Made by a program: the position numbers and the translations under genes. Below are positions 4,922 to 49,680 of a DNA stretch of 64,000 bases, one piece after another. The stretch covers positions 732,673-796,672 of the forward strand of contig OZ025661.1 in the NCBI GenBank assembly GCA_964019335.1, given 5' to 3'. The notes under the pieces were generated by a model. It made no database searches. It was not told where the DNA came from and saw nothing but the letters and a program-made list of their open reading frames with translations. The DNA comes from Diplonema japonicum. Its lineage: Eukaryota > Protista > Euglenozoa: Diplonemea. The number at the start of each line of letters is the position of its first letter. The first letter of the stretch is position 1.

Positions 4922-4973
<52 letters not shown>

Positions 4974-4974
4974 T

Positions 4975-5220: not shown

Positions 5221-5286
<66 letters not shown>

Positions 5287-5287
<1 letters not shown>

Positions 5288-5375
5288 CAAATTCCAGCGA
5301 AGGCCCCCGCAAACTAATGTGGTTCCACTTATGGCTATATCTGTCTGCAGGCTGCTTGGAACTTTCCTAGGTTTT
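5287..5375. repeat. ~90-bp dispersed repeat, copy 2
   Basis: Matches 2078-2165. Confidence 0.8.
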
Positions 5376-7924: not shown

Positions 7925-8785
7925 TCATGGGTGGGAGTGAAAATAAAAATTCACTTTATTTCACTCCTGACTTTATTTTCACGCTCCGGCTTCTAAAAGA
8001 AATTAGGCCCAGGAGTGAAAAAATTCTGATAGCGTTAAAATAAGAAATATTGTTTCACTCCTGGGCCTAATTTAAGCAAAACCCTCCAAAAATTCCTACC
8101 AAGGTTCCTTTAGGATGGGCAAGAACCCGACTGCACAGGAGGCAGACGCAGCAGAGTTCACCCCCTTCCAAGAGTCATACGAAAAGGAGTGGGCACGCTT
8201 TTGTGTGTTTCATAATTATAGGAAGGAAAAGAAGGGCCCGTCCGAAAGAAGAGGATTCTATTCTCTATTTCAGCGACATAAACAAGCAAGGCCTGCTGCC
8301 AGTTCAGTCCGGACGGTCCCTTATTCAAGGCTAAACTCGGTTGTGAAGAGGAATTACAACAAGCAGTTGCACGACCACCCCCGACTAAAGGTCCCCCTCA
8401 AGAGGTTCCAAGAAGGCAAGTCAACAAAAAAGGCGAACATCTTTGCCCAAGAGCAAATAACAGAATTCTTTAGCACCGAGGTATGGCATCGTCCGCCACG
8501 CTTATGCAGCGTTGATGTTCGCAGGAAACATGTGCACTACCGAGGCACATATCCGACACCTGTTGTAATTGGTACCACCTGTACCTCCCACCCACTCAAA
8601 TTTTGCTGTCGTTAAATAAAATATCGTATTTGTGAATATAAGATTGATGATTTCACTTGTGGTGGCAGTTTTGACTCGTTAAACGTTATAACACTCGCTT
8701 CGCTCGTGATATAACCGTCACTCGTCAAAACCACTGCCACCACGCGTGAAATCATAGGATCTTATATTCACTAAATAAATAGTTA
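7925..8785 (+). mobile_element. Internally deleted Crypton-like element with N-terminal tyrosine-recombinase relic (ORF 8115-8615)
   Basis: YEKEWARFCVF...YSRLNSVVKR...HPRLKVPLKRFQEGKSTKKANIF..EQITEFF resembles the N-terminal/core-binding part of eukaryotic YR elements. Palindromic ends are shared with 55770, 56147-56795 and 59820-60172. Confidence 0.6.
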
Positions 8786-31225: not shown

Positions 31226-31565
31226 GGGGTGACCATGAGATAAATTAAGACATTTTTAAAACATTTTTATAAAACATTTTTTGAAAGATAAATTTTATTT
31301 TACGTGGGATGGTAGAGTTTCCTCTATTAAAAGCATTAGGCTCATGAGCGAGACAAGTAAGGTGTTGAGTAGGGAAAAAAGAAAAGAAATGAAATGAATG
31401 AGAGAAAAAAAAGAGAAAAAAAAAAAAAAAAAAAAAAAAGGAATAAATAGTGCTTCGAACAATCCTCCCTTCACTCCCCTCCCCTAGTGTATTTTCGTTC
31501 CCTGCCAAAAAACCCCTCCCTCCTTTTAAGACGGTACAGTGTATTGAAAAGAAAAAAAAAATAAA

Positions 31566-31602
<37 letters not shown>

Positions 31603-32150
31603 AAAAAAAAAAATAAAAAAGAAAGAAAAAAAAACTATATAAATAAACAACAGAAAGAAAGAAAAACAATTCAAGCCCCAACGACAAACAAAAACCGGCA
31701 TGGGGACGGCTCGGGGCCGGTCGAAGGCAAGAGTCGCCCCGAAATCCTTAAGACGATCCTTCCTATTGAGGGGGATGCGCTACCAGGGGAAAGGAAAAAA
31801 GGTGGCCATGGGCAGGACAGTCGAAGGAATGTACTAGGGGGCCAAGAGGCAGACTGACTGCGCCATAGGCGATACAAAAGGAGAAGATTTTGACCAAGAA
31901 AGAATGGAACAATGGAATATCTGAAAGGAAGTATACACACACTCCCCTTACTGAATACCGTCTTGCTTCACCCTGTGATTTGCCAGGCACAATTATGTCA
32001 CCCTGTGCAACACAGACTTTTGATGTTTCAAACCTCTTTATCTTCTCTCCACCTTTTGTCTCCCCCACTGGCAGTGGAACAAATATTATTATTATTATTA
32101 TTATTATTATTAAAAGTATTTCCGAAAAAAAAAAAAAAAAGAAAAGAATC

Positions 32151-34349
32151 ATGTCGACCTCCAACAAGAAGAAAAAGAGGCCCGCTCACCACAAGTCCAG
32201 GACGGAAGAAATCCTGGAGAAAGCCCGCGGTGAGCGGGTAAAGGACAACGCCGCCGCCAGGGCGAAGCGCACGCGCGAGGAGGTGGAGAGGAAGCGCGCA
32301 GAGGGGGTCACGCCGGTGGTGACACCCTCCCCCGGGCAAGGGAAGAAGGCGGCCAGAAGGGCCAGACAGAAGGCAGCAGCTGCTGACGCTGCCACCGCCG
32401 CCGCTTCGGGCTCCGACGACTCTGTCGTCTTAATTAGCGAGTCGCCGGGCGTTGTCACCTCGTTCACGGTCGACACGCCAGAGGTCAGGAGGGCGAGGAT
32501 GAGGACTGCTGCCGCCGACACCACTGCCACTGCTCCTGCACCTGCTGCTGCCGACTCCCCTGCTCCTGCACCTGCTGCTGCCGACACCACTGCTCCTGCG
32601 CCTGCTGCTGCCGACTCCCCTGCTCCTGCGCCTGCTCCAGCCTCTACTGCTGCCGTGTGGTCTACTGCCGTCCTCACTGCCGCTGCCTGCGACACCGCCC
32701 TCCCCATGTCGGACTCTGACACCGACGAGAAGGACACGGCCCCCGCTCCCGCACCGGCCCCGGAGCCTCACTGGGATCTGGTCCCCGACACGTGGGACGC
32801 CCCCATCTACACCAACACTGCTCCCCCTGAGGAGGTGCCCCGCGCCGTCGTCGCTCTCGACGACCTCCAGCAGGTGGACGCGATTCGCACTGCGAGGCCC
32901 ACGGCCTCCCTGACCTTCGTCCTCTTGACGGAGGTTGCCGGTTCGACCACCCCATGCACCGTCATCGTACTCGCCGGCCAGCGTGTCGTGCACAAGGCCG
33001 TGCACACCTTCTCGGTCGGGTCGAACCCCCCCTCCTACACCCCACTCGCTTCTTTTGATGGCGGCTCTGAGGTAGTGTACGTCAGCGTGAAAGCTGACAG
33101 CGTGAACGCGGCGAAGGCCAGGGTTCGGGACCTCGTCGCGACCCAGGGCGTGGCGGTGGAGGAGCAGGCGATCTTCCGCCCGAAGAAGATCGACGGGAAC
33201 GAGCCGCGGGCGCGGCACTGGAGCCACGAGGTGGGCCTGCGGCTCCCGGCGGCATCCGTCCATGCGGTACTCCGGGCCTCGGGCGACGGCTGCATGGTCA
33301 GGACGACCGAGCGGCGCGGGGGGTACACCTACGTGCCCATCGTAGCGGAGGGGAGGGCGGAGGCCTTCCAGCTGGCGAAGGCACTGGGCGGGTTGTCCCT
33401 GGGGGTGGCCCATCGCAAGGGTTGGACCGTGAGGTGCCTGCCGGAGACGGAGCAGCGTCTGAGGGAGGCCCTCGCCAAGCAGAGGACAAAGCGTCGGTAC
33501 CTGCTCACCGGAGCCCCGCTGTCTGTTACCAGGGCAGCCTTCGACGGGATGATGGACCACATCGGTTGGAAGCCGTCGTCCATCATCCGACGCTCTGACA
33601 CGGCGTTCCAGGGCACGAGGCAACTCGTGTTCTTCATCGTCGCCGACGCCCCGCCCCCCAAGGCCAGGACATGGCTCTTCGGCTCTCGTCTCGTTCGACT
33701 GCACGACGCGGAAGACCACCCGAGCGTCACGCTCCCGCCCCGCACCAACAAGAAGGCTCCACCCGCGGCTCGGACGCCGGTTGCGGCAACCACGGCCCAG
33801 ACGCCGACGCCGGCCCCTGGCCCCACGGTGCAGTCCACAGGGCTGCCGAGCACCAATCCGTGGTCATCTCCACCGAGCTCGGTTGCCCCTCCGCCACTTG
33901 GCACTGTGACTCCGGTCTCCTCTGCGGCTTCCCCGACCACGACACCTCCCCGTGACTCCCAGAAGAAGAATCCCGCACCGGAACCAGAGGTCCCGGCGCT
34001 CCTCGCGCTGATCCAGTCGATGCAGGCGACCATCGACGGTCTGCAGGCGACGGTCCGCGACCTCCAGGAGAGGATGGCAGCGTCACTTGGCGCGCCGGCG
34101 TCATCTGCAGACGGAGCTGGGCGGACGGCAGTGGCTGGGAAGGGCAAGGGCGGCAAGGCTGGGTCCAAGGCAGGGACGAAGGGGCACCAGGCGCAGGGCG
34201 TAAGCACGCCAGGCCCCTACCCGACATCGACGGAGCAAGGGGGCGGAAGGGGACGCGCCCAGTCGCTGGCTGGCGACTCTGCTTCCCCCAACGGGGCCGG
34301 CCGTGGACGGGCAGCCTCTGTGGGCCCGGCCCCCGCCCCTGCCAATTGA
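32151..34349 (+). CDS. Family B1 ORF1
   Basis: ATG at 32151. Basic N-terminus, Ala/Pro tandem repeats (32505-32650), and a C-terminal half homologous to 46086-46913 (FQGTRQLVFFIV, RTWL, DHP). Confidence 0.85.
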   Translation: MSTSNKKKKRPAHHKSRTEEILEKARGERVKDNAAARAKRTREEVERKRAEGVTPVVTPSPGQGKKAARRARQKAAAADAATAAASGSDDSVVLISESPGVVTSFTVDTPEVRRARMRTAAADTTATAPAPAAADSPAPAPAAADTTAPAPAAADSPAPAPAPASTAAVWSTAVLTAAACDTALPMSDSDTDEKDTAPAPAPAPEPHWDLVPDTWDAPIYTNTAPPEEVPRAVVALDDLQQVDAIRTARPTASLTFVLLTEVAGSTTPCTVIVLAGQRVVHKAVHTFSVGSNPPSYTPLASFDGGSEVVYVSVKADSVNAAKARVRDLVATQGVAVEEQAIFRPKKIDGNEPRARHWSHEVGLRLPAASVHAVLRASGDGCMVRTTERRGGYTYVPIVAEGRAEAFQLAKALGGLSLGVAHRKGWTVRCLPETEQRLREALAKQRTKRRYLLTGAPLSVTRAAFDGMMDHIGWKPSSIIRRSDTAFQGTRQLVFFIVADAPPPKARTWLFGSRLVRLHDAEDHPSVTLPPRTNKKAPPAARTPVAATTAQTPTPAPGPTVQSTGLPSTNPWSSPPSSVAPPPLGTVTPVSSAASPTTTPPRDSQKKNPAPEPEVPALLALIQSMQATIDGLQATVRDLQERMAASLGAPASSADGAGRTAVAGKGKGGKAGSKAGTKGHQAQGVSTPGPYPTSTEQGGGRGRAQSLAGDSASPNGAGRGRAASVGPAPAPAN

Positions 34350-37300
34350 AGGGGTCCCGCTGAGCAGGGGGGGCGTCAGATCGACGACCACGCCCCCTCT
34401 CCTGGTCTCCCGCGCATACAGCCGAGGAGACACCTTCCACATCACTTGTACGACGTCCTCCCTTCCTTGATCCCTTCCTTACTTGAACGGATGTCGGCCA
34501 GGGACCTGCTGGGGCTGCTTGGGCTGGTTGAGACGAACCCCGGTCCACCTAAGAAGCTCCCACCCCCGAAGCCGAAGGGACTCAGGGTCCTGTCCTGGAA
34601 CTGCAACGGTCTTGCCGCCAAGTGGTCAACCGTGTCCTACCACGCTGTCCTACTGACGCTGGATATCATTATGATCCAGGAGACACACCTTAGGGAGGGG
34701 CATGAGACACCATACCTGCCTGGATACACGTCCTACAGGAGGGACCGCACAACACCGGTGACGGACGGCTCTGCGACGAGAGGCGGTGGTGTCATCACGT
34801 ATGTCCGTGACTGCCTTGCCTCGGAGGAAGCTCCTTTCGTACTCCCTGAAGGTGACAGTGTCACTGAGCGATTAGACGTGAGGATCTCCTGTGTGAAGCG
34901 CGTCCCGGTCACCCTCTCCAACGTGTACCTCACGCCTGTGAGTATAAGCAGAGGAACAAGGGACCCCGAGTACCTACGGCCGGGCAGCCTACCTGTGGGG
35001 AAGAACACGATCGTTGCTGGCGACTTCAACGCACACCACAGCTCTTGGGATGCCAAGGTGACAACGCCCAACGAAAGGGGGAACGTGGTCAGGGACTGGC
35101 TTGACACCCACGGCTACACCGTCTACAACAACCGAGACGAGCCGACGCGGGACTCACCGCCACGCGTTCTGGACCTGGTGGTGGGACGTTGTGCGGAACT
35201 GGAGCCGAGGACGTTGGGGACGTGGGGCTCTGATCACAGCCCGGTTTCCTTCCGCCTGCCGCTTGAGGACGCCTACTGCTCGGAGCGACCCTGCCCTACC
35301 TGGAACTTCAAAAAGGCCAGGTGGGACGACTTCACCGCGGCCGCCGCTGCCCTTCTGACCAAGATCGACACGAAGGCCCACATTGACTCCTTCACGAAGG
35401 AGGTTACAGAGGCTCTTCTGCATGCAGCTGACGACCACATTCCGCTTTGCGGAGTGCGACGAGGCCCGACCCCCTGGTGGACGGCCGAACTCGAAGACGC
35501 CTTCGAAGAACGGAACGCCCTGCGGGATCGCTTCCTCAAGTCGGCTGAGACTGAGGACGACAGCGTGGCGGCGGTCTACAAGGCGAAGGTCAAGGAGGTA
35601 AACCAACTCATGACCGAGTCGAAGCGCGCGGCCTGGGGTGAGATGGCGGCTGACCTCAGTCGGAGCAAGGACCTCGGGTCTGCGTTTAGGGCGGTGAAGA
35701 AGCTGGACGGCAGACACCGCAGACCGCACCTTCCCATTCTCGAGGGGAGGTTCGTGACGGACAAGGCGAAAGCCGACCGCCTGGGGGCTCACTTCGGCAA
35801 GCTCTACGGCCAGGGTGGTGATGGGGACGCGGTGGACGTAGCTCCTTCGACGAACGTGCTTGGGTGCCACGCCTTTACGGTGTATGATCTCACCCGCGGT
35901 CTGGGAAGGATGAAGACACGCAGTGCAGCGGGTGATGATGGCATCTTCGCGGAGATGCTTCTCCACCTCGACCAACCCTCGCTCGGGGTTCTACTTCTGC
36001 TCCTCAATCGCTCATGGCAGGCGGGGATCGTGCCGGGTGCCTGGAAGAAGGGGGTGATTGTTCCAGTGGCGAAGGCAGGGAAGGACGCCACGTTGCTTGC
36101 ATCGTACCGTCCCATATGTCTCACTAGCTGTCTTTGTAAGCTGCTTGAGAGGATGATAGAGGAGAGGCTTACCTTTCTCCTAGACTCTAGCGCGTCGGGC
36201 GTTGAGGGTCTCCACGACAGCCAGGCTGGCTTCAGGAGGGGCCGCTCCACGGAGGAGCAGGTGGCGTCCCTGACCGGGTGCCTGTCGAGGAACAAAGACA
36301 GTCGGCGTCTGTCGGCTGCCCTGCTGTTTGACTTCTCATCTGCGTTTGACCTGGTTCAGCACGAAGCTCTCTTGGGCATGATGCGGAGGAAAGGGATCCC
36401 TGAGCCCTTCGTCGAATGGACGCGCTCCTTCCTCTGCGGTCGTACGGCGGCGGTCACGGTGGGTCGTTCGCGAGGGTCGACGACGAAGGTGAGGAGAGGG
36501 GTGCCCCAAGGGTCTGTGCTGGGACCCGTCCTTTACACCATCTACGTCGACGAGCTAGCCAGGTTGCTGGTTGGGATGGCGGACCTGTCGGTTCTTTATG
36601 CCGACGATGTTGCGGTGGTGGTCTCAGCCGGGCAGGGCGACCTGGCTGGTCTTGAGCGAGGGGCCCAGGCTGTGATGGACGCGGTTGAGGGCTGGTGTGG
36701 GAGACGGGGCATGCTGCTGAGCTCCAGCAAGTCGCAGGCAGTGTGCGTTCCCTATCAGAAGCGGCTTAATGTCTACTTCTCTTCGTCGCGTGTCCCGCTT
36801 TGCCCGGGGGCCTTCCAGGACCCTGTCCTTAATCTTGGGGTTGGGGTCTGTGGGACCTTGTCTGGCGTCCGTGAGCTGTCTGGCTTTCGGGTCGTGGAGG
36901 CGGGTGGCAAACGGTCCTTCGACATTCCCGCCGCCATCCGGAGGTCCGACATTGGTTACATGGCGGCTCGCCCCTTGCCTCTATGTGGGTCGGCGAAGTA
37001 TCTTGGGGTCACTGTAGACTCTGGGCTCACGTTTGACGAGCATGCGGGGGATGTCCTGAGGAGCGCTGACAAGAGGCTGAGGGTACTAAGGCTCCTGTCG
37101 GGCACGACCTGGGGGTGCAAGAAGGCCACGCTCCGATCTCTGTACCTCACGTACGTTCTCCCGCTACTCCGGTACTGCATGGGTGTTTACTTTGCCAGGC
37201 TCAGGGACAGCAGGGTGGAGGAGCTTGTTGGGCTCCACCAGAGAGCGGCGGTGCTGATCTCGGGTTGTTGGCACGGCTCGGGCACGGCGAAGGTTGTTGC

Positions 37301-38657
37301 TGAGGCAGGTCTGCTACCCCTCCGACAGATGGCTGAGGGAGCTGCGGCGGTGTTGACGGCGAAGTCGTTCTGCTGGAGGACCTCCCCGGTTCACCGCGAG
37401 GTCCTTGAGCAGAAGCGGATGACCGGTATGGGCAATGGGTGGCTGCGTGCGGGTATCCTTGCGCTACGACGCTGCGGACTGCAGGGGTGGACGACGCAGG
37501 AAGGCTTCAGGAAGTACGACACCTTCGAGCTACTGACTGCCTCGCCCAAAGTAGCACCGTGGCACGCGTTCCTGGTGGAGTTCAGAACTGCCCTTCCCGG
37601 CAGGGTCACGCGTTCGTCGCCGGACGTGGATAAGCGGAAGGCGGCCGTGGAGGCTCTGGCTGCCCTTCCACCGGGTATCCATGCCTATACGGATGGTTCT
37701 GTCGTACGGGACCGCCAGAGGTGGAGGGGCGGCGCCGGGGTCTACTTGCAGCTCCCCCGCCCCCACGAACCCGTGTCCGAGAGCTTCGGCGTCAGCAATT
37801 TCTGCTCTTCCTTTCGGGCGGAGGGTCTGGCTGTCAAGGTGGCTCTGGACATGGTGGCCGCGCTCCGGAGCGAGCACCCCACGTTGGCAGACAGCCGGCT
37901 GTCGATCTGTACCGACTCGCTCTCTCTCCTTGATCAGCTGAGGGCAGGTCCTTCGCGGCAGAGGGAGAGGCTCGACCACGAGACCTGGGAACTGCTGGTG
38001 GCCGCGGCACGTGCACAAGGTGCACCAGTCATTCTCCAGTTTGTGCCGTCCCACTGCGGGGTTCCTGGCAACGAGGCGGCAGACAGGCTGGCCGGGGAGG
38101 GCACGAAGCGCGAGCTGACTCGCCCCTCTCTCGACTACAGGTCGGTCAGGGCCCTGGTCCGTCGCCAGATTCAGCAGAGGTCTGCGGTCATTGTCGGGGA
38201 GGTGGCCCCGAGGTACGCGAGGGCCACGGGGCTCCGAGCGGCGTGCTTCCCCCAGTCCCTCCCCAGGCTAGCGGAGACGGTCATCTCGCGGCTGAGGGTA
38301 GGGCACTCCGCTCTCTTCTTCGGCTTCCTGCAGGCGGCTGGACCGAACAGGAAGAAGGCTGAGCTCAGCTGCCCAGCGTGTGGAGCAAAGATGTCCAGGG
38401 AGCACGTTGTTGGGGGGTGCGCTGTGGTTGGACGGGGTTCGCTCGACGCTCCCAATGGACGCCCCTCGCTGGTGGAGTGCCTGTCAAAACGCGTGACGCA
38501 GGTATTCACCCTCATCGCCGACTCTGGCTTGCTTGACTGGGCCAGATCCGGGGTCTTCACGTCGCCGTCTGCGGCAACGGCAGGTACCGCTGCCCCTTCG
38601 TTCATCCCGCCGGCTGTCTCCCTTGACGCCGGCCCTGCGGCCCCCGTGTTGCGCTGA
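34350..38657 (+). CDS. Family B1 ORF2: 2A-like-APE-RT-RNase H-CCHC (in frame with ORF1; first ATG at 34491)
   Basis: LVETNPGP; SWNCNG, IQETH, GDFNAHH, GSDH; PQGSVLGP, YADD; YTDGS, TDSLS, PSHCGVPGNEAAD; CPAC..SREHVVGGC. Confidence 0.95.
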   Translation, partial: RGPAEQGGRQIDDHAPSPGLPRIQPRRHLPHHLYDVLPSLIPSLLERMSARDLLGLLGLVETNPGPPKKLPPPKPKGLRVLSWNCNGLAAKWSTVSYHAVLLTLDIIMIQETHLREGHETPYLPGYTSYRRDRTTPVTDGSATRGGGVITYVRDCLASEEAPFVLPEGDSVTERLDVRISCVKRVPVTLSNVYLTPVSISRGTRDPEYLRPGSLPVGKNTIVAGDFNAHHSSWDAKVTTPNERGNVVRDWLDTHGYTVYNNRDEPTRDSPPRVLDLVVGRCAELEPRTLGTWGSDHSPVSFRLPLEDAYCSERPCPTWNFKKARWDDFTAAAAALLTKIDTKAHIDSFTKEVTEALLHAADDHIPLCGVRRGPTPWWTAELEDAFEERNALRDRFLKSAETEDDSVAAVYKAKVKEVNQLMTESKRAAWGEMAADLSRSKDLGSAFRAVKKLDGRHRRPHLPILEGRFVTDKAKADRLGAHFGKLYGQGGDGDAVDVAPSTNVLGCHAFTVYDLTRGLGRMKTRSAAGDDGIFAEMLLHLDQPSLGVLLLLLNRSWQAGIVPGAWKKGVIVPVAKAGKDATLLASYRPICLTSCLCKLLERMIEERLTFLLDSSASGVEGLHDSQAGFRRGRSTEEQVASLTGCLSRNKDSRRLSAALLFDFSSAFDLVQHEALLGMMRRKGIPEPFVEWTRSFLCGRTAAVTVGRSRGSTTKVRRGVPQGSVLGPVLYTIYVDELARLLVGMADLSVLYADDVAVVVSAGQGDLAGLERGAQAVMDAVEGWCGRRGMLLSSSKSQAVCVPYQKRLNVYFSSSRVPLCPGAFQDPVLNLGVGVCGTLSGVRELSGFRVVEAGGKRSFDIPAAIRRSDIGYMAARPLPLCGSAKYLGVTVDSGLTFDEHAGDVLRSADKRLRVLRLLSGTTWGCKKATLRSLYLTYVLPLLRYCMGVYFARLRDSRVEELVGLHQRAAVLISGCWHGSGTAKVVAEAGLLPLRQMAEGAAAVLTAKSFCWRTSPVHREVLEQKRMTGMGNGWLRAGILALRRCGLQGWTTQEGFRKYDTFELLTASPKVAPWHAFLVEFRTALPGRVTRSSPDVDKRKAAVEALAALPPGIHAYTDGSVVRDRQRWRGGAGVYLQLPRPHEPVSESFGVSNFCSSFRAEGLAVKVALDMVAALRSEHPTLADSRLSICTDSLSLLDQLRAGPSRQRERLDHETWELLVAAARAQGAPVILQFVPSHCGVPGNEAADRLAGEGTKRELTRPSLDYRSVRALVRRQIQQRSAVIVGEVAPRYARATGLRAACFPQSLPRLAETVISRLRVGHSALFFGFLQAAGPNRKKAELSCPACGAKMSREHVVGGCAVVGRGSLDAPNGRPSLVECLSKRVTQVFTLIADSGLLDWARSGVFTSPSAATAGTAAPSFIPPAVSLDAGPAAPVLR

Positions 38658-39397
38658 AGTGAGTAGGGTGAGATCAACATTTCAATTCTTTTAGTGCTTA
38701 CGTTCCCTTCCCCTCTCTTCCACTCCCTCTCATCCTTTTCTTTATCATCATCCGGCGTCTGGCCTTTCTCTTACCAGTATGCCCGTCCCCTTTTAAACTT
38801 TTAAATTTTTAAAATTAACATCCTCTTGTTATCGTGTGCCCTGACATTGTAGTCAAAAACGGATGGCCCGGCCTACTCTGAAGTTGCCCAGATGAGTCCT
38901 CTCATCTTCGCACGAACGAGTGTGGTACGGCCATCCCCTCCCCCCGCCAGCCGGAGTGCAGCGGGGAGAGCAAATGCTTCCCCTATCATCCCCATGCGCA
39001 CACGCACACTCGCTTCCCCTTTTGATTTTGAGAGATTTTACTCTCACCCTTTCATGTTTCGCTCAATGGAGCAAATCCCTCTCGAGGGGGCGACCGGGGC
39101 CAGTTCCGGTCACCAGAGGTCCCAGTTGAGAAAAACGACGAACTGGGGTCAAGGTCCCCGTCCGAGTCACGTAGGTCTACGCGGCTTGGAATTAAAGTAA
39201 TTCAGCCCTCTTCGGCTGTTCCAAACAGGTGCACGGGTTGGCGGAGTCCACAGCTCCATCTGATTGCAGAAGAACTGGTCTTCGCCCTCCCTGTAATATT
39301 TCCATGCTTCCCTTCACCTTTCCCCTTCCCAGGTGTTGCTCCCCCATGGTGGCACCTATTGGTATTTTGAAAAAAAAAAAAAAACCACAGGTTTTTA

Positions 39398-39518
39398 GGG
39401 GTCGAATACACACACACACATGAAAATGTAAGCCCGACCCGAGTGTGTGTGGTGGCTGCTCACCTCCCAGTGGTGGCCCTGGGCAACGTGCACGCAAGGT
39501 GCACGGCCAAGAGGCAGC
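39398..39518 (+). ncRNA. HDV-like self-cleaving ribozyme 1
   Basis: P1 GGGGUC/GGCCCU (G.U at +1), P2 GCUGCUC/GAGGCAGC, P3 ACC/GGU, L3 UCCCAGU, J1/4 GG-GCAAC, P4 GUGCAC/GUGCAC, J4/2 GGCCAA (catalytic C at 39507). Confidence 0.8.
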
Positions 39519-39629
39519 TTCCCTCTTGTTGTGTGGGGTGAGTCGTGTGGTGACGCTGGACCCCTGGCCGAGCAAAACGAGGGGGGTGGCTGGAGCGAAG
39601 ACGGTCTGTTTGGCACAAGCCGCTATTAA

Positions 39630-39754
39630 GGGGTCCGATTACACACACACATGAACATGTAGACGAACGCGGTGTGTGTGGTGGCTGCCCACCTCCACGG
39701 TGGTGGTCCCTGGGCAACGCGCAGGTGGTGAAGGTTGCGCGGCTGAGAGGCAGC
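39630..39754 (+). ncRNA. HDV-like self-cleaving ribozyme 2
   Basis: P1 GGGGUCC/GGUCCCU (one U-U), P2 GCUGCCC/GAGGCAGC, P3 ACC/GGU, L3 UCCACGGU, GG-GCAAC, P4 GCGCA/UGCGC, J4/2 GGCUGA (C at 39743). Confidence 0.78.
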
Positions 39755-40967
39755 TCGAGAGGAGGAGCAGGGGAACGGTGTTGCGTTGGGCGGCCGAGGG
39801 CCGGAGCCGGAGCGCCGTGTTGGATGGCATCCCCTGGGGAAGCCTCCTGCACGCCAGAACGAGGACCGGATCCGGAGACGCCGTTTGATGGTTTTCCTGG
39901 GGAAGCTGACCTGAACGCCCGAGCGAAGTGGCCTGAGCGTGGGGAGCACTGTTTGCCGACAGAAAACAAGATTAATGCAAAATGTCCAGAGTGCGCAACA
40001 GTGTTTTCCACGTGAGGGGTTCGATTTCAAAGTGGGTCCTCCAGCCACCAGAGTTGTAGGCTGGGTTCCCGCGGAGAGAGAATCGGAGCGGAGGCGTCAA
40101 GTACGGTGGACCACCTCAAGGGATGTAAGTCCATTGTGTGACACAGTCTCTCGGTGAAGGTCCGACTTCTGGTGGGTAGGCAGGCAGAACCGTATAGGGG
40201 TGTAAGGAACACCATTGTGTGACCTGTCGCACACGGGGAAAGCCCAAGGCCGGTGGGTTATCTGCCAACGTGTCCCCCTCCTCTACTTCGCCTCTCACAA
40301 CCTCTTCCTCCCCGCTGACGATTGACTCCACAGCACTCGCCGGCCTACCTGGTGCGCCCGCGTCATTACGCGATAGGGAGTCTCGTTGGAAAAACATCTT
40401 TCGCAGCTGAGAAGGGGGGTTTTTTTTTTTAGAAATAGTAACCAGTAATTCTTTTTTCCCCCTCCCCCATTGGTTTCCCTTTCTTTTTATTTTCCCTACC
40501 AGGCTCCTTTTCTAGTTATGCATTCCTCCCTTCTTTGTGGAAGTTGAGTTCTGAACTTGACTTTTCCTTTTACATTTCCTTTTTCAAATTTATATTTTAG
40601 GCTCCCACAGCCCAACAAAACCAGCAGATGGTGGGGTCCCTGTGGCTGGATAAATCAAAATTAGGGATCTCATCGCCGTCCTTTAATATTTGGGGTTGTC
40701 TTTATTTGGTGACAGCCGAAGCCTTCGAGGCCCAAGAGCTGCGTGGCGGGGGAATGGGGAAAAATAAGAAAGGTGGATGTCGGGGGCCCAGGAAAATATA
40801 CAAGAGGTCGAGCAAACGAGCAAGAGGTCCCCCCCGATATGGCTCAGTAAGAGAGACTGTTTTAACCTTCCCTTCCCAATTTTTATGGTTTCAACTTTCT
40901 CCGCCCCCCATCCCCCCCCCGCCTGGTAGTGGAATAATTATTATTATTATTAAAAGTATTTCCGAAG

Positions 40968-41050
40968 CCTCTCGTAGCTCAATTGGTAGAGCGCGCGACT
41001 GTAGAATAATAGCCATCGCGCGGCCGCTGGTTCGATTCCGGCCGAGAGGA
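40968..41050 (+). tRNA. tRNA-Tyr(GTA) with 10-nt intron (41005-41014)
   Basis: Acceptor stem CCTCTCG/CGAGAGG, D arm GCTC-AATTGGTA-GAGC, CGCGA-CTGTAG[AATAATAGCC]A-TCGCG, GGTTCGATTCC, T6 terminator. Confidence 0.95.
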
Positions 41051-41135
41051 TTTTTTGGATGTCAGAAGAGGAATTTCTGATATAAGTGCACTTTAAACAA
41101 AAAAAAGTGTTTACTTCCCGCCCGGCGATTGTAAC

Positions 41136-41206
41136 GCGTAAATGGTCTAGTGGTAGAATGGCTCCCTGCCACGGAGTCGGCCCGGGTTCGATTCCCGGTT
41201 TACGCA
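41136..41206 (+). tRNA. tRNA-Gly(GCC)
   Basis: Identical to 15342-15412. Confidence 0.96.
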
Positions 41207-41278
41207 TTTTTTAATCCCTATCATAAAATGGTGGTGAAAAAAGGTGGGCAAGTAAAAAAGGGAAGACGGGAAAAAAGA

Positions 41279-41350
41279 AGGGCACGCCCGGGTTCGAACC
41301 AGGGACCAATCGGACTGCAGCCGAACGCTCTACCACTGAGCTACGTACCC
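41279..41350 (-). tRNA. tRNA-Cys(GCA)
   Basis: Reverse complement is GGGTACG-TA-GCTCAGTGGTAGAGC-G-TTCGG-CTGCAGT-CCGAT...GGTTCGAACCCGGG-CGTGCCC-T. Confidence 0.93.
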
Positions 41351-41792
41351 CTGCAAGATTTTTTTTTTTTTTTTTTTCAAAATACCAATGCAGGGCCGCC
41401 ATGGAGAGCAACACCTGAGAAAAGGGAAAAAAAGGTGAAGGGAAACCATGGGGAAATAGGGAGGGCAAAGGACCAGGCTTCTGCAAGCAGGAGGAGCCCT
41501 GGTCCCCCACCAACCCGTGCTCTGCTTTGGGACAGCCGAAGAGGGCTGAATTACATTATTCCCTCAGTCAAGTGAGAGAAAAACGGGGGCCTACCTTCCA
41601 GCTGGATGTCCTTCTTTGGCTGGAACCTCCGGCGGAAAGCCCCCCAGGGAGGTATTGCTCCTATTGAGCGAATCATTGGTGAGTGTGAAAATAAAAAAAA
41701 AGGGGAAATGGGAAACAGTGAGAGGAAGGTGAAGGAAGGGAAAGGAAAGTGGAAAACACAACATTTCACTTTACACACACGCGGGCGATCCC

Positions 41793-44700
41793 TTAGCGCA
41801 GCACGGGGGCCGCGGGACCGGCGTCAAGAGAGACCGGAGGAGGGGGCGGCACGTTTGAAGGTGCAGTGACGTCTGTAGACGCCAGGGATGATGGCGAGGT
41901 GAACAGTCCGGAGCGTGACCAGGCGAGCAGGCCAGACTCAACAACGAGGTCGTAGATCTGGGTCACGCGTCTCGACAGGGAGAAGGCTAGGGAGGGAGTA
42001 CCAGCAGGAGTGTCGATCGCCCCCCTCCCGATCACAGGGCACCCACCGACAACATGCTCCCTGGACATCGGTGCTGCGTGGCAGGCTGGGCACCGGAGCA
42101 CACCCTTGTGCTTCCTGTTCGGGCCAGCAGTCTGCAGGAAGCCGAAGAAGAGAGCCGAGTGACCAATCCGCAGCCGCGAGATGACCGTTTCAGCTTGTCT
42201 GGGGAAGCCAAGGGGGAAGTGCGCAGACCGAAGCTCGGTCGCCACCGCGTAGTTGTGGGCGAGGGATGTTATGAGCTCCGCGGACCTCCGCACCACCCAC
42301 CGTCGCACCAGGGCCCTCACTGATCGGTAGTCAAGGGAGGGCCTGTCCTGCTTCCGCTTCGTTCCCTCCACGGCCAGAGCGTCAGCCTTCTCGTTCCCGT
42401 CCACCCCACAGTGGGAGGGCACAAACTGGAGGACCACCGGTGTCCCCTGCGTGCGCGCCGCGGACACCAGCCGGCTCCACGTCTGGTGGTCGAGCTTCTC
42501 CCTCTGTCGCGTTGGGCCAGCTCGCAGCTGCTCGACGAGGGAGAGGGAGTCGGTGCAGATCGACAGCGGGGACTTCGCCAGCGAAGGGTGTGTTTTTCGG
42601 AGGGTAGCCACCATATCCAGCGCCGTTTTCACAGCCATGCCCTCTGCCCGAAAAGATGAACAGAAGTCGTTGACGCCATGGCACACAGACACAGGGGTCA
42701 GGGGGGGAGGCAGCTGCAGATAAACCCCAGAGCCACCTTTCGCCTTCTGTCCGACCTGTACAACCGAGCCATCCGTGTAGGCATGGATGCCCGGGGGGAG
42801 AGCCGCAAGAGCAGCCTCGGCCGCCTTCCGCCTGTCCGCGTCTGGCGACGATCGCGTGACCCCGCCGGGGAGGTCAGTCCTGAAGTCGACCATGCCTGTC
42901 TGCCACGGGGCCGCCAGGGGCGTAGCCGACAGGTACTCGAAGTGCACCTTTGGTTCCAACCCGCATCGACGCAGTGCTTGGTAGCCAGAGCGCAGCCACC
43001 CACACCCCAGCCTGTTCGCCTGCTTCAGCTTGACCGTCTCCCTGTGAACCGGGGAAGACTGCCAGCAGAAGGCCTTCGCCGTCATCGTCGCCGCAGCACC
43101 CTCCGCCATTCTTTCGAGGGGAAGCAGTCCTGCCTCAGCTAGGAGCTTGTACCCTCCGGAGCCACTCCAGCAGCCCGTGATCAGCACCGCCGCCTCCTGG
43201 TGAAGCCCAGCCAGGTCCTTCCTCCCGACATCATCGAGCCTGCTGTAGTAGACCCCCATGCAGTAGCGCAGCAGCGGGAGGATGTACGTAACGTAGAGAG
43301 ACCGCAGAGTGTCCCTCTTGCTGCCCCAGGACGTGCCGGACAAGAGCTTCAGCACCCTCAGCCTTTTGCTGGCCCGCCGTAGGATGTCCTGTGCGTGTTC
43401 ACCGAACGTGAGCCCAGAGTCCACCGTAACCCCAAGGTACCTCGCGTGTTCAGATAGAGGCAGGGGACGGGCCGCAACGTAATCCACGTCGGGCCGTCGC
43501 ACGGCTGCATGCATGTCCCGCACGCAGCGGATCCGCACACCACCCGCCTCCACAACCTGAAGGCCCGCCAGCTCCTGGTCCCCGGAGATCGTGCCATCGG
43601 CGTTCACCCCCAGGCCGAAGAGTGGGTTCTGGAAGGCACCTGGCTGAAGGGGGACTCGTGACGAAGTGAAGTAGACCCCGAGACGTTTCTGGGGGGGGAC
43701 GCAGACTGCCTGCGTCTTGGACGTGCTCAGCAGCATGTCACGCTCCCTGCACCAGTCCTCAACCGCATCCACCACCGCCTGCGCCTTCCGCTCCAGCCCA
43801 GCCACGTCCCCTTGTCCAGAGGAGATCACAACCGCCACGTCGTCGGCGTAGAGCACCGAGACGTCCGCCAGTCCCTCCAGTCTCCTGGCGAGTTCGTCGA
43901 CGTAGATGGTGTACAGGATGGGACCCAAGACAGAGCCCTGGGGGACACCCCGTCGCACCTTCGTCGTCGACCCCCTCGACCGTCCAATCGTGACCGCAGC
44001 AGTACGGCCGCATAGAAAGGACCGCGTCCACTCCACGAAGGGTTCGGGGAGACCCTTCCCTCGCATCTTGTCCAGCAGGGCACCATGGGGCACCAGGTCG
44101 AAGGCAGAAGAGAAGTCGAACAGCAGAGCGGCCGAGAGACGTCGATCGTCTTTGTTCCTCGACATGCACTCAGTGAGGGTTGCCACCTGCTCCTCCGTGG
44201 AGCGGCCGCGTCTGAAACCAGCCTGGCTGTCGTGGAGTCCCTCGACTCCCGTCCCGTCCGCGTCAAGAAGAAACGTGAGCCTCTCCTCGATCATCCTCTC
44301 CAGCAGCTTGCAGAGGCAGCTGGTCAGGCAGATCGGCCGGTAGGAAGCCAAGAGAGTCGCATCTTTTCCAGGTTTCGGTACCGGGACGATCACTCCCTTC
44401 TTCCAGGCACCGGGGACGACACCCATCAGCCAGGAGCGATTGAGGAGTAGAAGGAGGACACTGAGGGAGTCCGTGTTCAGGTGTAGGAGCATCTCCGAGA
44501 AGATTCCGTCTTCCCCGGCCGCGCTGCGCGTCTTCATCCTTCTCAGGCCGCGGGTGAGGTCGTCCACGGTGAAGGCTTGACACCCGAGTCTGCTTGCAGA
44601 AGGAGCGGCGTCCTTCGAGTTCCCGTCACCACGCCTGCCGTAGAGCTTAGCGAAGTGCGCCCCCAGCCGGTCGGCCTTCGCCTTGTCCGACACAAATCTT

Positions 44701-46085
44701 CCCTCGAGTACAGGAAGGTGTGTCTTTCGGTGCCTGCCGTCCAGCTTCTTCACCGCTCTGAACGCAGCCCCGAGGTCCTTGCTCCGGCTGAGGTCGGCCG
44801 CCATCCTTCCCCATGCCTCACGCTTCGTCTCGTCAAGGAGTCGGTTGACTTCCTTCACCTTCGCCCTGTACTCCTCCACCACCACGTCCGCCTCTTGAAG
44901 CAGGAGTTCGCGCAGGGTGTTCCGCTCTTCGAAGGCGTCCTCGAGCTCAGCAGTCCACCAGGGGGTCGGGCCACGTCGCATCCCACAGAGGGGAATGTGG
45001 TCGTTCGCCGCAGTCAAAAGGGCTTGTGTAAACCCCTTCGTGACAGAGTCAATCGGAGCCGCCGTGTCAACACCAGCAAGCAGGCGGGCAACAGCAGCAG
45101 TGTAGTCATCCCATCTGGCTTTTTTGAAATTCCAGGTGGGGAAGGGGCGCTCCGAACGGTAGACGTCCTCAAGAGGCAGGTGAAAGGATACGGGACTATG
45201 ATCGGAGCCCCACGTGCCCAGCGTCTTCGGCTCAAGCTTCGCGCAGCGCCCCACAACCAGGTCCAGAACGTGTCGTGACGAGTCCCTCGTCGGTTCGTTG
45301 CGGTCGTTGTAGACGGAGTACCCGTGGGTGTCCAGCCAGTCCCTGACCACGTTCCCCCTCTCGTTCGGCGTCGTCACCGTGGCGTCCCAGGAGCTGTGGT
45401 GAGCATTGAAGTCACCCGCTATGACTGTGTTCTTCCCCATGGGAAGGCTGCCAGGCCGCAGGTACTCAGGGTCCCTCGTGCCTCTGCTCGCGCTTACCGG
45501 TGTAAGGTAAACGTTGGAGAGAGTGATCGGCTCACGCTTCTCGCAGGAGATCCTCACATCCAGTCTCTCAGTGACACAGTCCCCAGCCGGGAGTACGTGC
45601 GGAACCTCCTCCGAGGCAAGATCGTCGCGGACATACGTGACAATACCACCACCCCTCGTCGCAGTGCCGTCAGTCACCGGTGTCAACCGATCCCTCCTGT
45701 ATGACCTGTACCCAGGCAGGTGTGGCGTGTCGTGCCCTTCCCTCAGGTGCGTCTCCTGTATCATGATGATGTCCAGCGACAAGAAGTCAGCATGGCGAGA
45801 TACGACGGTCCATTTCGCAACGAGGCCGTTGCAGTTCCACGAGACAACCTTGAGACCCTTAGGCGACGGGGGCGGCAGCTTCTTGGGTGGGCCAGGGTTT
45901 GTTTCGACCAGCCCAAGCAGCCCCAACAGGTCCCTGACGGACATCCTCCCGAGTAGGGTGGGGATCAGTGCAGAGAAGTCGGTGAAGAAACAGAGAGGTA
46001 GGAGTCTCCTTGGGAGGATGCGAGGGAGACTAGGAGAGGGAGCATGGTCGTGGATCTGCTGCTCCCCCTGTTCTGCGGGGCCCCT
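41793..46085 (-). CDS. Family B2 ORF2: 2A-like-APE-RT-RNase H-CCHC (first ATG at 45944; frame open back to the ORF1 UGA)
   Basis: Same motifs as B1; 1383 aa from the ATG. Confidence 0.95.
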   Translation of the reverse strand, partial: RGPAEQGEQQIHDHAPSPSLPRILPRRLLPLCFFTDFSALIPTLLGRMSVRDLLGLLGLVETNPGPPKKLPPPSPKGLKVVSWNCNGLVAKWTVVSRHADFLSLDIIMIQETHLREGHDTPHLPGYRSYRRDRLTPVTDGTATRGGGIVTYVRDDLASEEVPHVLPAGDCVTERLDVRISCEKREPITLSNVYLTPVSASRGTRDPEYLRPGSLPMGKNTVIAGDFNAHHSSWDATVTTPNERGNVVRDWLDTHGYSVYNDRNEPTRDSSRHVLDLVVGRCAKLEPKTLGTWGSDHSPVSFHLPLEDVYRSERPFPTWNFKKARWDDYTAAVARLLAGVDTAAPIDSVTKGFTQALLTAANDHIPLCGMRRGPTPWWTAELEDAFEERNTLRELLLQEADVVVEEYRAKVKEVNRLLDETKREAWGRMAADLSRSKDLGAAFRAVKKLDGRHRKTHLPVLEGRFVSDKAKADRLGAHFAKLYGRRGDGNSKDAAPSASRLGCQAFTVDDLTRGLRRMKTRSAAGEDGIFSEMLLHLNTDSLSVLLLLLNRSWLMGVVPGAWKKGVIVPVPKPGKDATLLASYRPICLTSCLCKLLERMIEERLTFLLDADGTGVEGLHDSQAGFRRGRSTEEQVATLTECMSRNKDDRRLSAALLFDFSSAFDLVPHGALLDKMRGKGLPEPFVEWTRSFLCGRTAAVTIGRSRGSTTKVRRGVPQGSVLGPILYTIYVDELARRLEGLADVSVLYADDVAVVISSGQGDVAGLERKAQAVVDAVEDWCRERDMLLSTSKTQAVCVPPQKRLGVYFTSSRVPLQPGAFQNPLFGLGVNADGTISGDQELAGLQVVEAGGVRIRCVRDMHAAVRRPDVDYVAARPLPLSEHARYLGVTVDSGLTFGEHAQDILRRASKRLRVLKLLSGTSWGSKRDTLRSLYVTYILPLLRYCMGVYYSRLDDVGRKDLAGLHQEAAVLITGCWSGSGGYKLLAEAGLLPLERMAEGAAATMTAKAFCWQSSPVHRETVKLKQANRLGCGWLRSGYQALRRCGLEPKVHFEYLSATPLAAPWQTGMVDFRTDLPGGVTRSSPDADRRKAAEAALAALPPGIHAYTDGSVVQVGQKAKGGSGVYLQLPPPLTPVSVCHGVNDFCSSFRAEGMAVKTALDMVATLRKTHPSLAKSPLSICTDSLSLVEQLRAGPTRQREKLDHQTWSRLVSAARTQGTPVVLQFVPSHCGVDGNEKADALAVEGTKRKQDRPSLDYRSVRALVRRWVVRRSAELITSLAHNYAVATELRSAHFPLGFPRQAETVISRLRIGHSALFFGFLQTAGPNRKHKGVLRCPACHAAPMSREHVVGGCPVIGRGAIDTPAGTPSLAFSLSRRVTQIYDLVVESGLLAWSRSGLFTSPSSLASTDVTAPSNVPPPPPVSLDAGPAAPVLR

Positions 46086-49160: not shown

Positions 49161-49680
49161 CCAATAATAATAATAATAATTATTCCACTACCAGGCGGGG
49201 GGGGATGGGGGGTGGAGAAAGTTGAAACCATATTGGGAAGGGAAGGTTAAAAACAGTCTCTCTTACTGAGCCATATCGGGGGGAACCTCTTGCTCGTTTG
49301 CTCGACCTCTTGTATATTTTCCTGGGCCCCCGACATCCACCTTTCTTATTTTTTCCCCATTCCCACGCCACGCAGCTCTTGGGCCTCGAAGGCTTCGGCT
49401 GTCACCAAATAAAGACAACCCCAAATATTAAAGGACGGCGATGAGAGTCTGAGTAACCCCAAATATTAAAGGACGGCGATCAGAGTCTGAGCTGAGGAGG
49501 AGCGTGCCTTGGTCTGTTGACGCGTTGGCGGAAGCGTTCGCGACTGCTTCGTCCTCGACCTTCTGGGCATCTGCCTCCTTGGCGGCCGCCAACGTCAAAG
49601 CTTCCTCCTTTTTGGCAGCGGCCTCCCTCTCCGTTGCGGCAGCGGCTGCGGTTGCTGCGACCTTCTTCTTCTCCTTTTAA
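49161..49680 (-). mobile_element. Truncated/chimeric (TAT)n-tailed element plus probable ORF1 fragment
   Basis: 49161-49446 is the reverse complement of about 40667-40950, followed by a ~38-bp junction duplication. The minus frame KEKKKVAATAAAAATEREAAAKKEE...LLLSSDSD resembles the B1 ORF1 N-terminus. Confidence 0.65.

What the first reader, a model, noticed from the sequence alone, without database searches (positions are those of the whole stretch)
39398..39754. Tandem pair of HDV-like ribozymes heading a non-autonomous element
Seen: two diverged units each show the full nested double-pseudoknot pattern (G.U first pair, P3 ACC/GGU, L3 starting UCC, GG-GCAAC as in genomic HDV, P4, GGCnrA, P2). 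P4 differs in sequence but stays paired, and J1/2 carries an unusual (AC)n...(GU)n microsatellite hairpin. In unit 1, CGACCC in J1/2 could compete for the P1 5' strand. Known: single HDV-like ribozymes define the 5' ends of R2, L1Tc/ingi (Pr77) and SIDERs. Inference: they would excise this element from read-through array or polycistronic transcripts, and double cleavage would free a ~232-nt RNA with 5'-OH and 2',3'-cyclic phosphate ends, which could be circularised.
Basis: partly seen in the sequence, partly recalled or inferred. Interest (0 to 1): 0.85.

Follow-up and report, generated by a model that had tools for sequence, protein, structure and literature searches.

The report
Two ribozyme-headed retroposons joined by accident
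The two hepatitis-delta-type self-cutting RNA motifs look real, but each is the head of a different 1.3-kb non-coding jumping element that lands in front of tRNA genes; they sit side by side only at this one site, so this is a new example of a known strategy, not a new double-ribozyme device.

Summary
Observation confirmed. Both units (39398-39518 and 39630-39754) have the full HDV-like double-pseudoknot layout with the catalytic C at 39507 and 39743. Support: weak Rfam HDV hits, pairing kept across about 27 genomic copies, and P1/P4 covariation against two further ribozyme families in the same genome. Cleavage itself is untested.

The units are not one tandem device. Unit 1 heads family A (1262 bp, about 8 copies). 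Unit 2 heads family B (1323 bp, about 14 full copies at 98-100%). A and B share only the ribozyme (81% over 117 nt) and the last 36 nt. Both are non-coding, end in (ATT)n, and insert 9-16 nt upstream of tRNA genes with 7-13-bp target duplications. All full copies start at the predicted cleavage G.

In the window, only the first 229 nt of A are present, fused through TAA to a complete B. This junction is unique in the 62.5-Mb genome, so the "232-nt excisable RNA" is a by-product of one chimeric insertion.

B borrows the 3' end of an (ATT)n-tailed LINE whose full-length copies lack the ribozyme. Earlier notes of this scan already reported ribozyme-headed retroposons on other DNA of this genome, which they take to be a diplonemid.

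The parts
32112..32126 (+). Upstream copy of AAAAGTATTTCCGAA. The same 15 nt lie between the B tail and tRNA-Tyr, so this looks like a target-site duplication around the whole stack.
32127..39384 (+). Full-length poly(A)-tailed LINE (ORF1; ORF2 with APE, RT and RNase H) with an A-rich leader and no ribozyme. The poly(A) is at 39370-39384.
39385..39397 (+). CCACAGG, a target duplication that is native to a tRNA-Val locus elsewhere on the contig, plus TTTTTA filler before the family A 5' end.
39398..39518 (+). Unit 1: the HDV-like ribozyme of family A. Predicted cleavage is 5' of G39398 and the catalytic C is 39507.
39398..39626 (+). First 229 nt of family A (full length 1262 bp elsewhere). It is cut off at its 3' side here.
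39627..39629 (+). TAA filler between A position 229 and the B 5' end. Other copies carry similar 1-4-nt fillers.
39630..39754 (+). Unit 2: the HDV-like ribozyme of family B. Predicted cleavage is 5' of G39630 and the catalytic C is 39743.
39630..40952 (+). Complete family B element: 1323 bp, no long + strand ORF, tail GGTAGTGGAATA(ATT)n at 40925-40952.
40952..40966 (+). Downstream copy of AAAAGTATTTCCGAA, the leader of the tRNA gene.
40968..41050 (+). Intron-containing tRNA gene (anticodon GTA, Tyr by my reading). It is the insertion target.

Best explanation
The window holds a stack of non-LTR retroelements that were inserted one after another just upstream of a tRNA-Tyr gene.

Unit 1 and unit 2 are the 5'-terminal HDV-like self-cleaving ribozymes of two different non-coding, non-autonomous retroposon families. 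Family A is 1262 bp and family B is 1323 bp.

Proposed mechanism (inferred):
1. These elements lie downstream of other elements and of host genes, so they are transcribed as part of longer read-through RNAs.
2. The ribozyme folds into the nested double pseudoknot. The (AC)n/(GU)n hairpin in J1/2 acts as a P1.2-type clamp.
3. The RNA cuts itself 5' of the first G, which gives the element RNA a defined 5'-OH end.
4. The reverse transcriptase of an (ATT)n-tailed LINE recognises the shared 3' tail and copies the RNA at a nick 9-16 nt upstream of a tRNA gene.
5. It runs to the cleaved 5' end, adds 1-4 extra bases, and the copy is sealed with a 7-13-bp target duplication.

The side-by-side arrangement arose once. 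While B was being inserted at tRNA-Tyr, its 5' junction became joined to position 229 of an A sequence copied from a tRNA-Val locus 76 kb away. The likely route is template switching onto an uncleaved LINE-A read-through RNA, or gene conversion.

Shown: the anatomy, the copy boundaries, the duplications and the pairing. Inferred: cleavage, read-through transcription and the template switch.
For: Fold:
- All HDV core elements are present in both units.
- Both units give weak Rfam HDV hits.
- 98% of cells pair in the double pseudoknot over 15 distinct copies. Two pairs change on both sides: P4 U-A to C-G, and the outer P2 pair as C-G, U.G or U-A.
- Two more ribozyme families in the genome have the same architecture. 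Family C has P1 GGUGGUG/CAUCACC against GGGGUC/GGCCCU here. P4 sequences are unrelated but always paired.
- The core pattern occurs 818 times in the genome, against 19 for the reversed control.

5' ends:
- 13 full B copies and 6 A copies begin at the predicted cleavage G, and their upstream flanks are unrelated.
- TSDs are present, with 1-4 nt of filler before the G.

Separate families:
- Searches show two families. A and B share only 117 nt of ribozyme and the last 36 nt.

Partner LINE:
- The last ~70 nt of B match the 3' end of an APE-RT LINE at 94.6%.
- Two full-length copies of that LINE start GGTAGGGAAGGCT + poly(A) + ATG, and the ribozyme model finds nothing there.

tRNA targeting:
- Copies lie upstream of tRNA-Pro, Leu, Lys, Thr and Tyr genes.

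One-off chimera:
- The junction is unique in the genome.
- The LINE-poly(A)/CCACAGG/TTTTTA/A junction is explained by two ordinary insertions at the tRNA-Val locus.
- The window is identical to that locus over the last 835 nt, including the poly(A) length.

J1/2 hairpin:
- A known activating role for such hairpins is described in PMC4908430.
Against: - There is no cleavage assay and no RNA end data. The runs that hold the stretch are Logan contigs of unknown kind and cannot show starts or ends.
- Rfam scores are below gathering for all HDV families.
- B's P1 has a U.U mismatch, or a shifted register without the G.U first pair.
- Covariation within A/B is thin because the copies are close relatives. 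The stronger covariation comes from families C and D, which I aligned by hand.
- A sharp common 5' end could also come from a transcription start at the same G.
- The template-switch origin is inferred. The tRNA-Val LINE copy is 5'-truncated, so the model needs homology-mediated resolution against the resident full-length LINE.
Confidence: 0.8

Rival explanations
1. A designed tandem double-ribozyme unit. The two ribozymes work together to excise a ~232-nt RNA with 5'-OH and 2',3'-cyclic phosphate ends, which is circularised, as in retrozymes or deltavirus-like agents.
For: - Both motifs look intact, and at this locus a read-through transcript would in principle be cut twice.
- Head-to-tail stacks of ribozyme-headed elements exist: contigs of run X7 show B-tail to B-head joints, and so does the flank of L010.
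- SIDER2 elements of Leishmania carry two tandem ribozyme signatures (PMC4035085).
Against: - The junction is unique in 62.5 Mb.
- The 229-nt piece is simply the front of a 1262-bp element that continues elsewhere.
- No copy of a 232-nt unit exists on its own.
- No RNA data show circles.
Confidence: 0.05
2. The shared 5' end is set by transcription initiation from an internal promoter at the first G. The HDV-like fold is inactive or vestigial, or it has a dual promoter/ribozyme role as in Pr77 of L1Tc.
For: - Genomic copies show only where the RNA begins, not how.
- Pr77 of L1Tc is both an internal promoter and a ribozyme (PMC3383444).
- The J1/2 insert shares the motif AUGAAAAUGUAAG between families A and C, so it could be a DNA-level or protein-binding signal.
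Against: - Base pairing, not just sequence, is kept across families with different P1 and P4 sequences.
- The catalytic C, L3 UCC and GG-GCAAC are invariant in intact copies.
- A pure promoter would not need the long-range P1 and P2 complementarity.
Confidence: 0.12
3. Chance resemblance: GC-rich repeat sequence that happens to fit a loose HDV descriptor.
For: - A purely structural descriptor that allows G.U everywhere hits about 15 other places in the window.
- Rfam scores are below threshold.
Against: - With the conserved core letters required, only these two places hit. Shuffles give 0.045 per window.
- The predicted cleavage site coincides with the repeat boundary in 19 copies.
- There are 818 core matches in the genome against 19 in the control.
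Confidence: 0.03

Closest known systems
L1Tc/NARTc and SIDER elements of trypanosomatids (L1TcRz in the Pr77 hallmark)
   Same: An HDV-like ribozyme occupies the first ~80-130 nt of non-LTR retroposons, including short non-coding ones, in Euglenozoa. It frees the element RNA from co-transcripts. SIDER2 even has two tandem signatures (PMC3185411, PMC4035085).
   Different: - Here the core is close to canonical HDV (CUGGGCAAC, L3 UCC) and carries a 50-60-nt structured J1/2.
- The presumed autonomous partner lacks the ribozyme, whereas L1Tc and NARTc share Pr77.
- Insertion is aimed at tRNA gene leaders.
- The tandem here is two different families fused once.
- No trypanosomatid RT is among the top 120 protein hits. 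The nearest named ones are from Diplonema papillatum at 33%.
R2 and R2-derived SIDEs of insects
   Same: - A 5' HDV-like ribozyme cuts the element out of a host co-transcript at the exact 5' junction.
- Non-autonomous derivatives keep the ribozyme and the 3' RT-binding end (PMC3774820, PMC3414825).
- Both are site-specific.
   Different: - R2 targets 28S rDNA and is co-transcribed by Pol I.
- SIDEs are internal deletions of R2. A and B share only about 36-70 nt of 3' end with their LINE, and nothing at the 5' end.
Large HDV-like ribozymes with a J1/2 peripheral domain (drz-Agam-2-1)
   Same: A stable helix (P1.2) in J1/2 pinches P1 and P2 together. In drz-Agam-2-1 it speeds cleavage by nearly 1000-fold, with the effect levelling off above ~4 kcal/mol (PMC4908430). 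The (AC)n/(GU)n hairpin here is predicted at about -15 kcal/mol.
   Different: - The helix here is built from a dinucleotide microsatellite whose length varies between copies.
- Its loop holds a small conserved hairpin.
- Its activity is untested.
Retrozymes (hammerhead-bearing non-autonomous retroelements that form circRNAs)
   Same: These are non-coding retroelements that carry their own self-cleaving ribozyme and depend on another element's RT (PMC4918200, PMC7229834).
   Different: Retrozymes use hammerhead ribozymes in repeated or tandem units and have documented circular RNA. Here there is one HDV-like ribozyme per element, no repeated unit, and no evidence of circles.
tRNA-gene-targeted LINEs (TRE elements of Dictyostelium; from my own knowledge)
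   Same: Non-LTR elements integrate at a fixed short distance from tRNA genes in a fixed orientation and pile up there.
   Different: As far as I know, TRE elements have no ribozyme-headed parasites. This genome is an unrelated lineage.

Membership tests
HDV-like self-cleaving ribozyme | Nested double pseudoknot: P1, P1.1, P2, P3 and P4 in the canonical order | tested here: met
   All helices were located by hand. 98% of cells are paired over 15 distinct copies, against 32-60% in the slid controls. P1 and P4 covary with families C and D.
HDV-like self-cleaving ribozyme | Catalytic C in J4/2, L3 starting UCC and pairing with the GG after P1 | tested here: met
   C39507 and C39743 sit in GGC(C/U)(A/G)AGA. 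L3 is UCC... and GG-GCAAC is invariant in intact copies.
HDV-like self-cleaving ribozyme | G.U wobble as the first pair of P1, at the cleavage site | tested here: inconclusive
   Met in unit 1. In unit 2 it is met only if a U.U mismatch inside P1 is accepted. The other register gives G-C first and an extra U before P1.1.
HDV-like self-cleaving ribozyme | Score above the Rfam gathering threshold for an HDV family | tested here: not met
   Scores are 25.9 and 22.5 bits against 44 (RF02682), and 19.8 against 50 (RF00094). The models lack the long J1/2 and mis-place P1, so this says little about the fold.
HDV-like self-cleaving ribozyme | Mg2+-dependent self-cleavage 5' of the first P1 base | not testable with these tools
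The reads tools gave only contigs of unknown kind.
Ribozyme-terminated non-LTR retroposon (R2 / L1Tc type) | The element's 5' boundary coincides with the predicted cleavage site | tested here: met
   13 B copies and 6 A copies start at the G, with 0-6 nt of filler and unrelated flanks.
Ribozyme-terminated non-LTR retroposon (R2 / L1Tc type) | Target-site duplications and a 3' end shared with an autonomous LINE | tested here: met
   TSDs are 7-13 bp. B's last ~70 nt are 94.6% identical to the tail of an APE-RT LINE.
Ribozyme-terminated non-LTR retroposon (R2 / L1Tc type) | The autonomous partner carries the same 5' ribozyme | tested here: not met
   Two full-length copies of the (ATT)n-tailed LINE begin GGTAGGGAAGGCT + poly(A) + ATG, and model R1 finds nothing there. 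Only two copies were examined.
Retrozyme-like tandem ribozyme unit giving circular RNA | The ribozyme-to-ribozyme unit recurs as a conserved repeat | tested here: not met
   The A(1-229)-B junction is found once in the genome.
Retrozyme-like tandem ribozyme unit giving circular RNA | Circular RNA with a back-junction at the cleavage sites | not testable with these tools
   No run on record as RNA holds the stretch.

The most novel reading that the evidence does not exclude
The HDV-like ribozyme is a portable 5'-processing cassette that parasites of ribozyme-less LINEs have picked up. At least four retroposon families share it, with about 800 cores in the genome. Because these elements stack head to tail in front of tRNA genes, read-through RNAs are cut into unit-length pieces with 5'-OH and 2',3'-cyclic phosphate ends. 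That is the substrate of the RtcB-type tRNA ligase. Some elements, or accidental short units such as the 232-nt piece here, could then exist as circular RNAs: an HDV-ribozyme counterpart of retrozymes in a free-living protist.
Probability: 0.1. Interest if true: 0.8.

Novelty: new member of a known kind. Interest (0 to 1): 0.45.

Why it matters
HDV-like ribozymes at the 5' ends of retrotransposons are an established theme (R2, L1Tc/ingi, RTE). This finding adds a canonical-looking, J1/2-expanded version in what earlier scan notes take to be a diplonemid. I found no paper that combines HDV-like ribozymes with diplonemids.

Two points go beyond a new host:
- The ribozyme sits on the non-autonomous parasites, while the LINE that lends them its tail lacks it.
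- The elements are aimed at tRNA gene leaders, where stacking makes read-through transcription and self-excision a necessity.

The A-B fusion is a natural record of a chimeric retrotransposition event that passed through an uncleaved ribozyme. The sequences are ready-made substrates for cleavage assays.

Tried and rejected
- The Rfam gathering scan found only tRNAs.
- A purely structural HDV descriptor was too loose, with about 15 chance loci. A first tightened version missed both units because I had placed P2 one base off and allowed too little spacing. I corrected this. That descriptor is post hoc, so it is not an unbiased test.
- My first P2 column assignment in the count of structure pairs was off by one and gave nonsense. 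I redid it.
- MAFFT could not align families A-D in register at P1. I therefore compared the families with a parser rather than with the count of structure pairs.
- Simple derivation of the window stack from the tRNA-Val locus, or the reverse, is rejected. That locus has a 5'-truncated LINE but a full A. The window has a full LINE but a truncated A.
- I looked for the ribozyme at the 5' end of the (ATT)n-tailed LINE. There is none.
- Public runs gave no run on record as RNA, only contigs. Contig ends at 39630 are expected at any repeat boundary and prove nothing.
- Two metagenome pattern scans found nothing.
- I did not verify the species name given in earlier notes. The nearest named RT relatives are from Diplonema papillatum.

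Full report
**What is there**

- Unit 1 runs from G39398 to C39518.
  - P1 GGGGUC pairs with GGCCCU (39475-39480), starting with G.U.
  - P2 GCUGCU (39455-39460) pairs with GGCAGC (39513-39518).
  - P3 is ACC/GGU, and L3 is UCCCAGU.
  - The two G after P1 can pair with the CC of L3 (P1.1) and are followed by GCAAC.
  - P4 is GUGCAC-GCAAG-GUGCAC.
  - J4/2 is GGCCAAGA, with C39507 in the place of the catalytic cytosine.
- Unit 2 runs from G39630 to C39754 and has the same plan.
  - P4 is different (GCGCA...UGCGC).
  - P1 is GGGGUCC/GGUCCCU: six pairs and a U.U mismatch, or six unbroken pairs in a register one base over.
- Between P1 and P2, both units carry a 50-55-nt insert. Its (AC)n and (GU)n runs form a hairpin predicted at about -15 kcal/mol.

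**Is it more than chance?**

- The Rfam gathering scan sees only tRNAs.
- The permissive scan puts HDV-F-prausnitzii (25.9 and 22.5 bits) and HDV_ribozyme (19.8 bits) on the 3' two thirds of both units. All are below threshold. P1 is mis-assigned because those models have no room for the long J1/2.
- A loose structural descriptor of my own hits many places.
- With the conserved core letters required, it hits only these two places. It hits 0.045 loci per shuffled window, and no shuffle had two. The descriptor was written after seeing the sequence, so it is a sanity check only.

**Two families, not one device**

- Searching the window's genome (62.5 Mb, 132 contigs) with 39385-39765 splits the query cleanly. 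About eight places match only the first 242 nt. About fifteen match only from 39628-39630 onward. Only the window itself has both.
- Family B is 1323 bp (39630-40952). It has about 14 full-length copies at 98-100% identity.
- Family A is not 232 nt. Four full copies continue past 39626 with CGGGGCACCGG... for another kilobase, 1262 bp in all.
- A and B share only the ribozyme (81% over 117 nt) and the last 36 nt.
- Neither has a long sense-strand ORF.
- Both end in GG(C/T)AGTGGAA(C/T)A...(ATT)n.

**The 5' ends**

- Thirteen full B copies and six A copies begin at the predicted cleavage G, behind unrelated flanks.
- Where both flanks can be read, there are 7-13-bp target duplications. Between the upstream duplicate and the G lie 1-4 extra bases (TTA, TA, A, GATC, TTTG), up to 6 in family A.
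- This is the pattern expected if reverse transcription runs to an RNA 5' end at that G and adds a few bases. It is the same genomic signature that supported ribozyme processing in R2 (PMC3774820).
- It does not by itself exclude a transcription start at the same base.

**Targets and partner**

- B copies lie 9-16 nt upstream of tRNA-Pro, Leu, Lys, Thr and, in the window, Tyr genes, in the same orientation.
- The last ~70 nt of B match the 3' end of an APE-RT LINE with the same (ATT)n tail at 94.6%.
- I followed that LINE upstream through three sets of copies. Two full-length copies begin GGTAGGGAAGGCT, then a poly(A) run and the ORF1 ATG. The ribozyme model finds nothing there.
- The poly(A)-tailed LINE in the window also begins with an A-rich leader and no ribozyme.
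- On this evidence the ribozyme belongs to the parasites, not to their LINEs. This rests on only two full-length copies.

**Comparative support for the fold**

- I built a covariance model from five family A copies and one B' copy (P1, J1/2 hairpin, P3, P4). It recovers 27 A/B-type copies in the genome, plus weaker hits that turned out to be two further families.
- Family C begins GGUGGUG, pairing with CAUCACC. Its P4 is CCCGAG...CUC(A)GGG around a 28-nt loop, and its J4/2 is GACGAACA.
- Family D has P1 GGGGCU/GGCCCU, P2 GAUG(G)CUG/CAGCAUC and a G/C-only P4, and is followed by an ATG.
- Against A, family C changes both partners at three P1 positions and one partner at two more, and it keeps all pairs. 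P4 is unrelated in sequence in all four families, yet it is always a hairpin in the same place.
- On the model-fitted alignment of 15 distinct A/B copies, with P2 and P1.1 added as pseudoknots, 98% of cells pair, against 32-60% in the slid controls. Two pairs change on both sides: P4 U-A/C-G, and the outer P2 pair as C-G, U.G or U-A. P2 and P1.1 were not part of the model, so their counts are not forced by the fit.
- The core pattern GCTG-N3-4-ACCTCC-N3-6-GGT occurs 818 times in the genome, against 19 for the reversed control. Most hits are family C.

**How the two units came to be neighbours**

- The window stack reads in this order:
  - an older (ATT)n-tailed element;
  - AAAAGTATTTCCGAA;
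  - the full poly(A) LINE;
  - CCACAGG and TTTTTA;
  - A(1-229);
  - TAA;
  - B;
  - AAAAGTATTTCCGAA-G;
  - tRNA-Tyr.
- The piece 'LINE poly(A)-CCACAGG-TTTTTA-A' is native to a tRNA-Val locus 76 kb away on the same contig. There, AACCACAGGCAACAG flanks a 5'-truncated LINE, and (A)AACCACAGG flanks a complete A. That is two ordinary insertions.
- The window matches that locus at 99.2% over 2321 nt. All 19 differences lie upstream of 38792. The last 835 nt are identical, including the poly(A) length.
- Neither locus can be the plain parent of the other. One has the full LINE and the other has the full A.
- My best reading is as follows. B was being copied at tRNA-Tyr next to a resident LINE. At the B 5' end, the reverse transcriptase added TTA on the cDNA and jumped onto an uncleaved LINE-A read-through RNA from the tRNA-Val locus at A position 229. 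The event was then resolved by homology with the resident LINE. Gene conversion is an alternative. Either way, the tandem is a single historical accident.

**RNA evidence**

- No run on record as RNA holds the stretch. The holders are Logan contigs of unknown kind.
- Laid on 38600-41400, they show no usable starts or ends. Contigs that begin at 39630 are expected at any repeat edge.
- One run (X9) has 30-60 times more depth on A and B than on the LINE 3' end. Three other runs show the opposite ratio. This would fit an RNA library with abundant A and B RNA, but it cannot be relied on.
- Contigs of X7 join the B tail to the B head through 6-9 bases, so B-B stacks exist.

**Comparison with what is known**

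- The closest systems are L1Tc/NARTc/SIDER of trypanosomatids (PMC3185411, PMC4035085) and R2 with its SIDEs (PMC3774820, PMC3414825).
- The structured J1/2 corresponds to the P1.2 peripheral domain that accelerates drz-Agam-2-1 by nearly three orders of magnitude (PMC4908430). It is therefore not odd in kind.
- No searchable paper combines HDV-like ribozymes with diplonemids. The D. papillatum genome paper mentions LINE and SLACS-type ORFs but no ribozymes.
- The RT of the window's LINE has its nearest named relatives in D. papillatum, at 33% identity. This agrees with the earlier notes that call this genome a diplonemid. I did not verify the species.
- Earlier notes of this scan had already described ribozyme-headed retroposons on other DNA of this genome, including a 1.33-kb one that is probably family B. 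The present finding is another sighting, plus the chimeric junction.

**Verdict**

The ribozyme reading is well supported by sequence and comparison, but cleavage is untested. The 'tandem pair heading one element that frees a circularisable 232-nt RNA' is not supported. It is a new member of a known kind, of moderate interest.

Noticed in passing
window 41277-41378 and 41793-45944 (- strand): A second poly(A)-tailed APE-RT-RNase H LINE lies on the - strand. Its poly(A) (41358-41378) ends about 7 nt upstream of tRNA-Cys (41277-41351, - strand). The tRNA cluster is therefore flanked by inward-pointing stacks on both sides.
   Followed up: partly
whole genome: The HDV core pattern GCTG-N3-4-ACCTCC-N3-6-GGT occurs 818 times, against 19 for the reversed control. 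Most hits are GCTGTTGACCTCCTCGTCGGT (family C, a short abundant retroposon).
   Followed up: partly
J1/2 of families A and C: window 39418-39431; L065 and L066: Inside the J1/2 loop is a small hairpin with a GNRA loop. It reads CAU-GAAA-AUG + UAAG in A and in one C copy, and UAU-GGAA-AUA + UAAG in other C copies, with one closing pair changed on both sides. B has the loop GAAC instead. It could be a tertiary contact or a protein site.
   Followed up: no
L091:2648-2730 (G000:C36): The 5' leader GGTAGGGAA(G/C)GCTT + A-run of the (ATT)n-tailed LINE is present twice in tandem in one full-length copy.
   Followed up: no
run X9 on window 39352-40855: Contig depth on A and B is 2000-8000. It is 75-160 on the LINE 3' end and about 10 on unique flank. 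Runs X6-X8 show B at or below LINE depth. This is either an RNA-like library with abundant A and B RNA or a strain with many more copies.
   Followed up: no
window 49166-49232 (- strand): Another copy of the (ATT)n-LINE/B-type 3' tail (95.5%) ends here. It directly abuts the start of a - strand LINE fragment (ORF 49164-47359 with RNase H), so this is further stacking away from any tRNA that I saw.
   Followed up: no
L012, L013, L014, L015, L016, L020 (B copies): Six full B copies have no tRNA detected by ARAGORN within 200 nt downstream of their tail. Their targets may be other small-RNA genes, older elements or degraded tRNAs.
   Followed up: no
window 31000-32111: A further non-coding element has the A-type tail (CTGGCAGTGGAACAAATATT(ATT)n) and is 75% similar to an internal part of A. 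In this stack it sits directly upstream of the LINE.
   Followed up: partly
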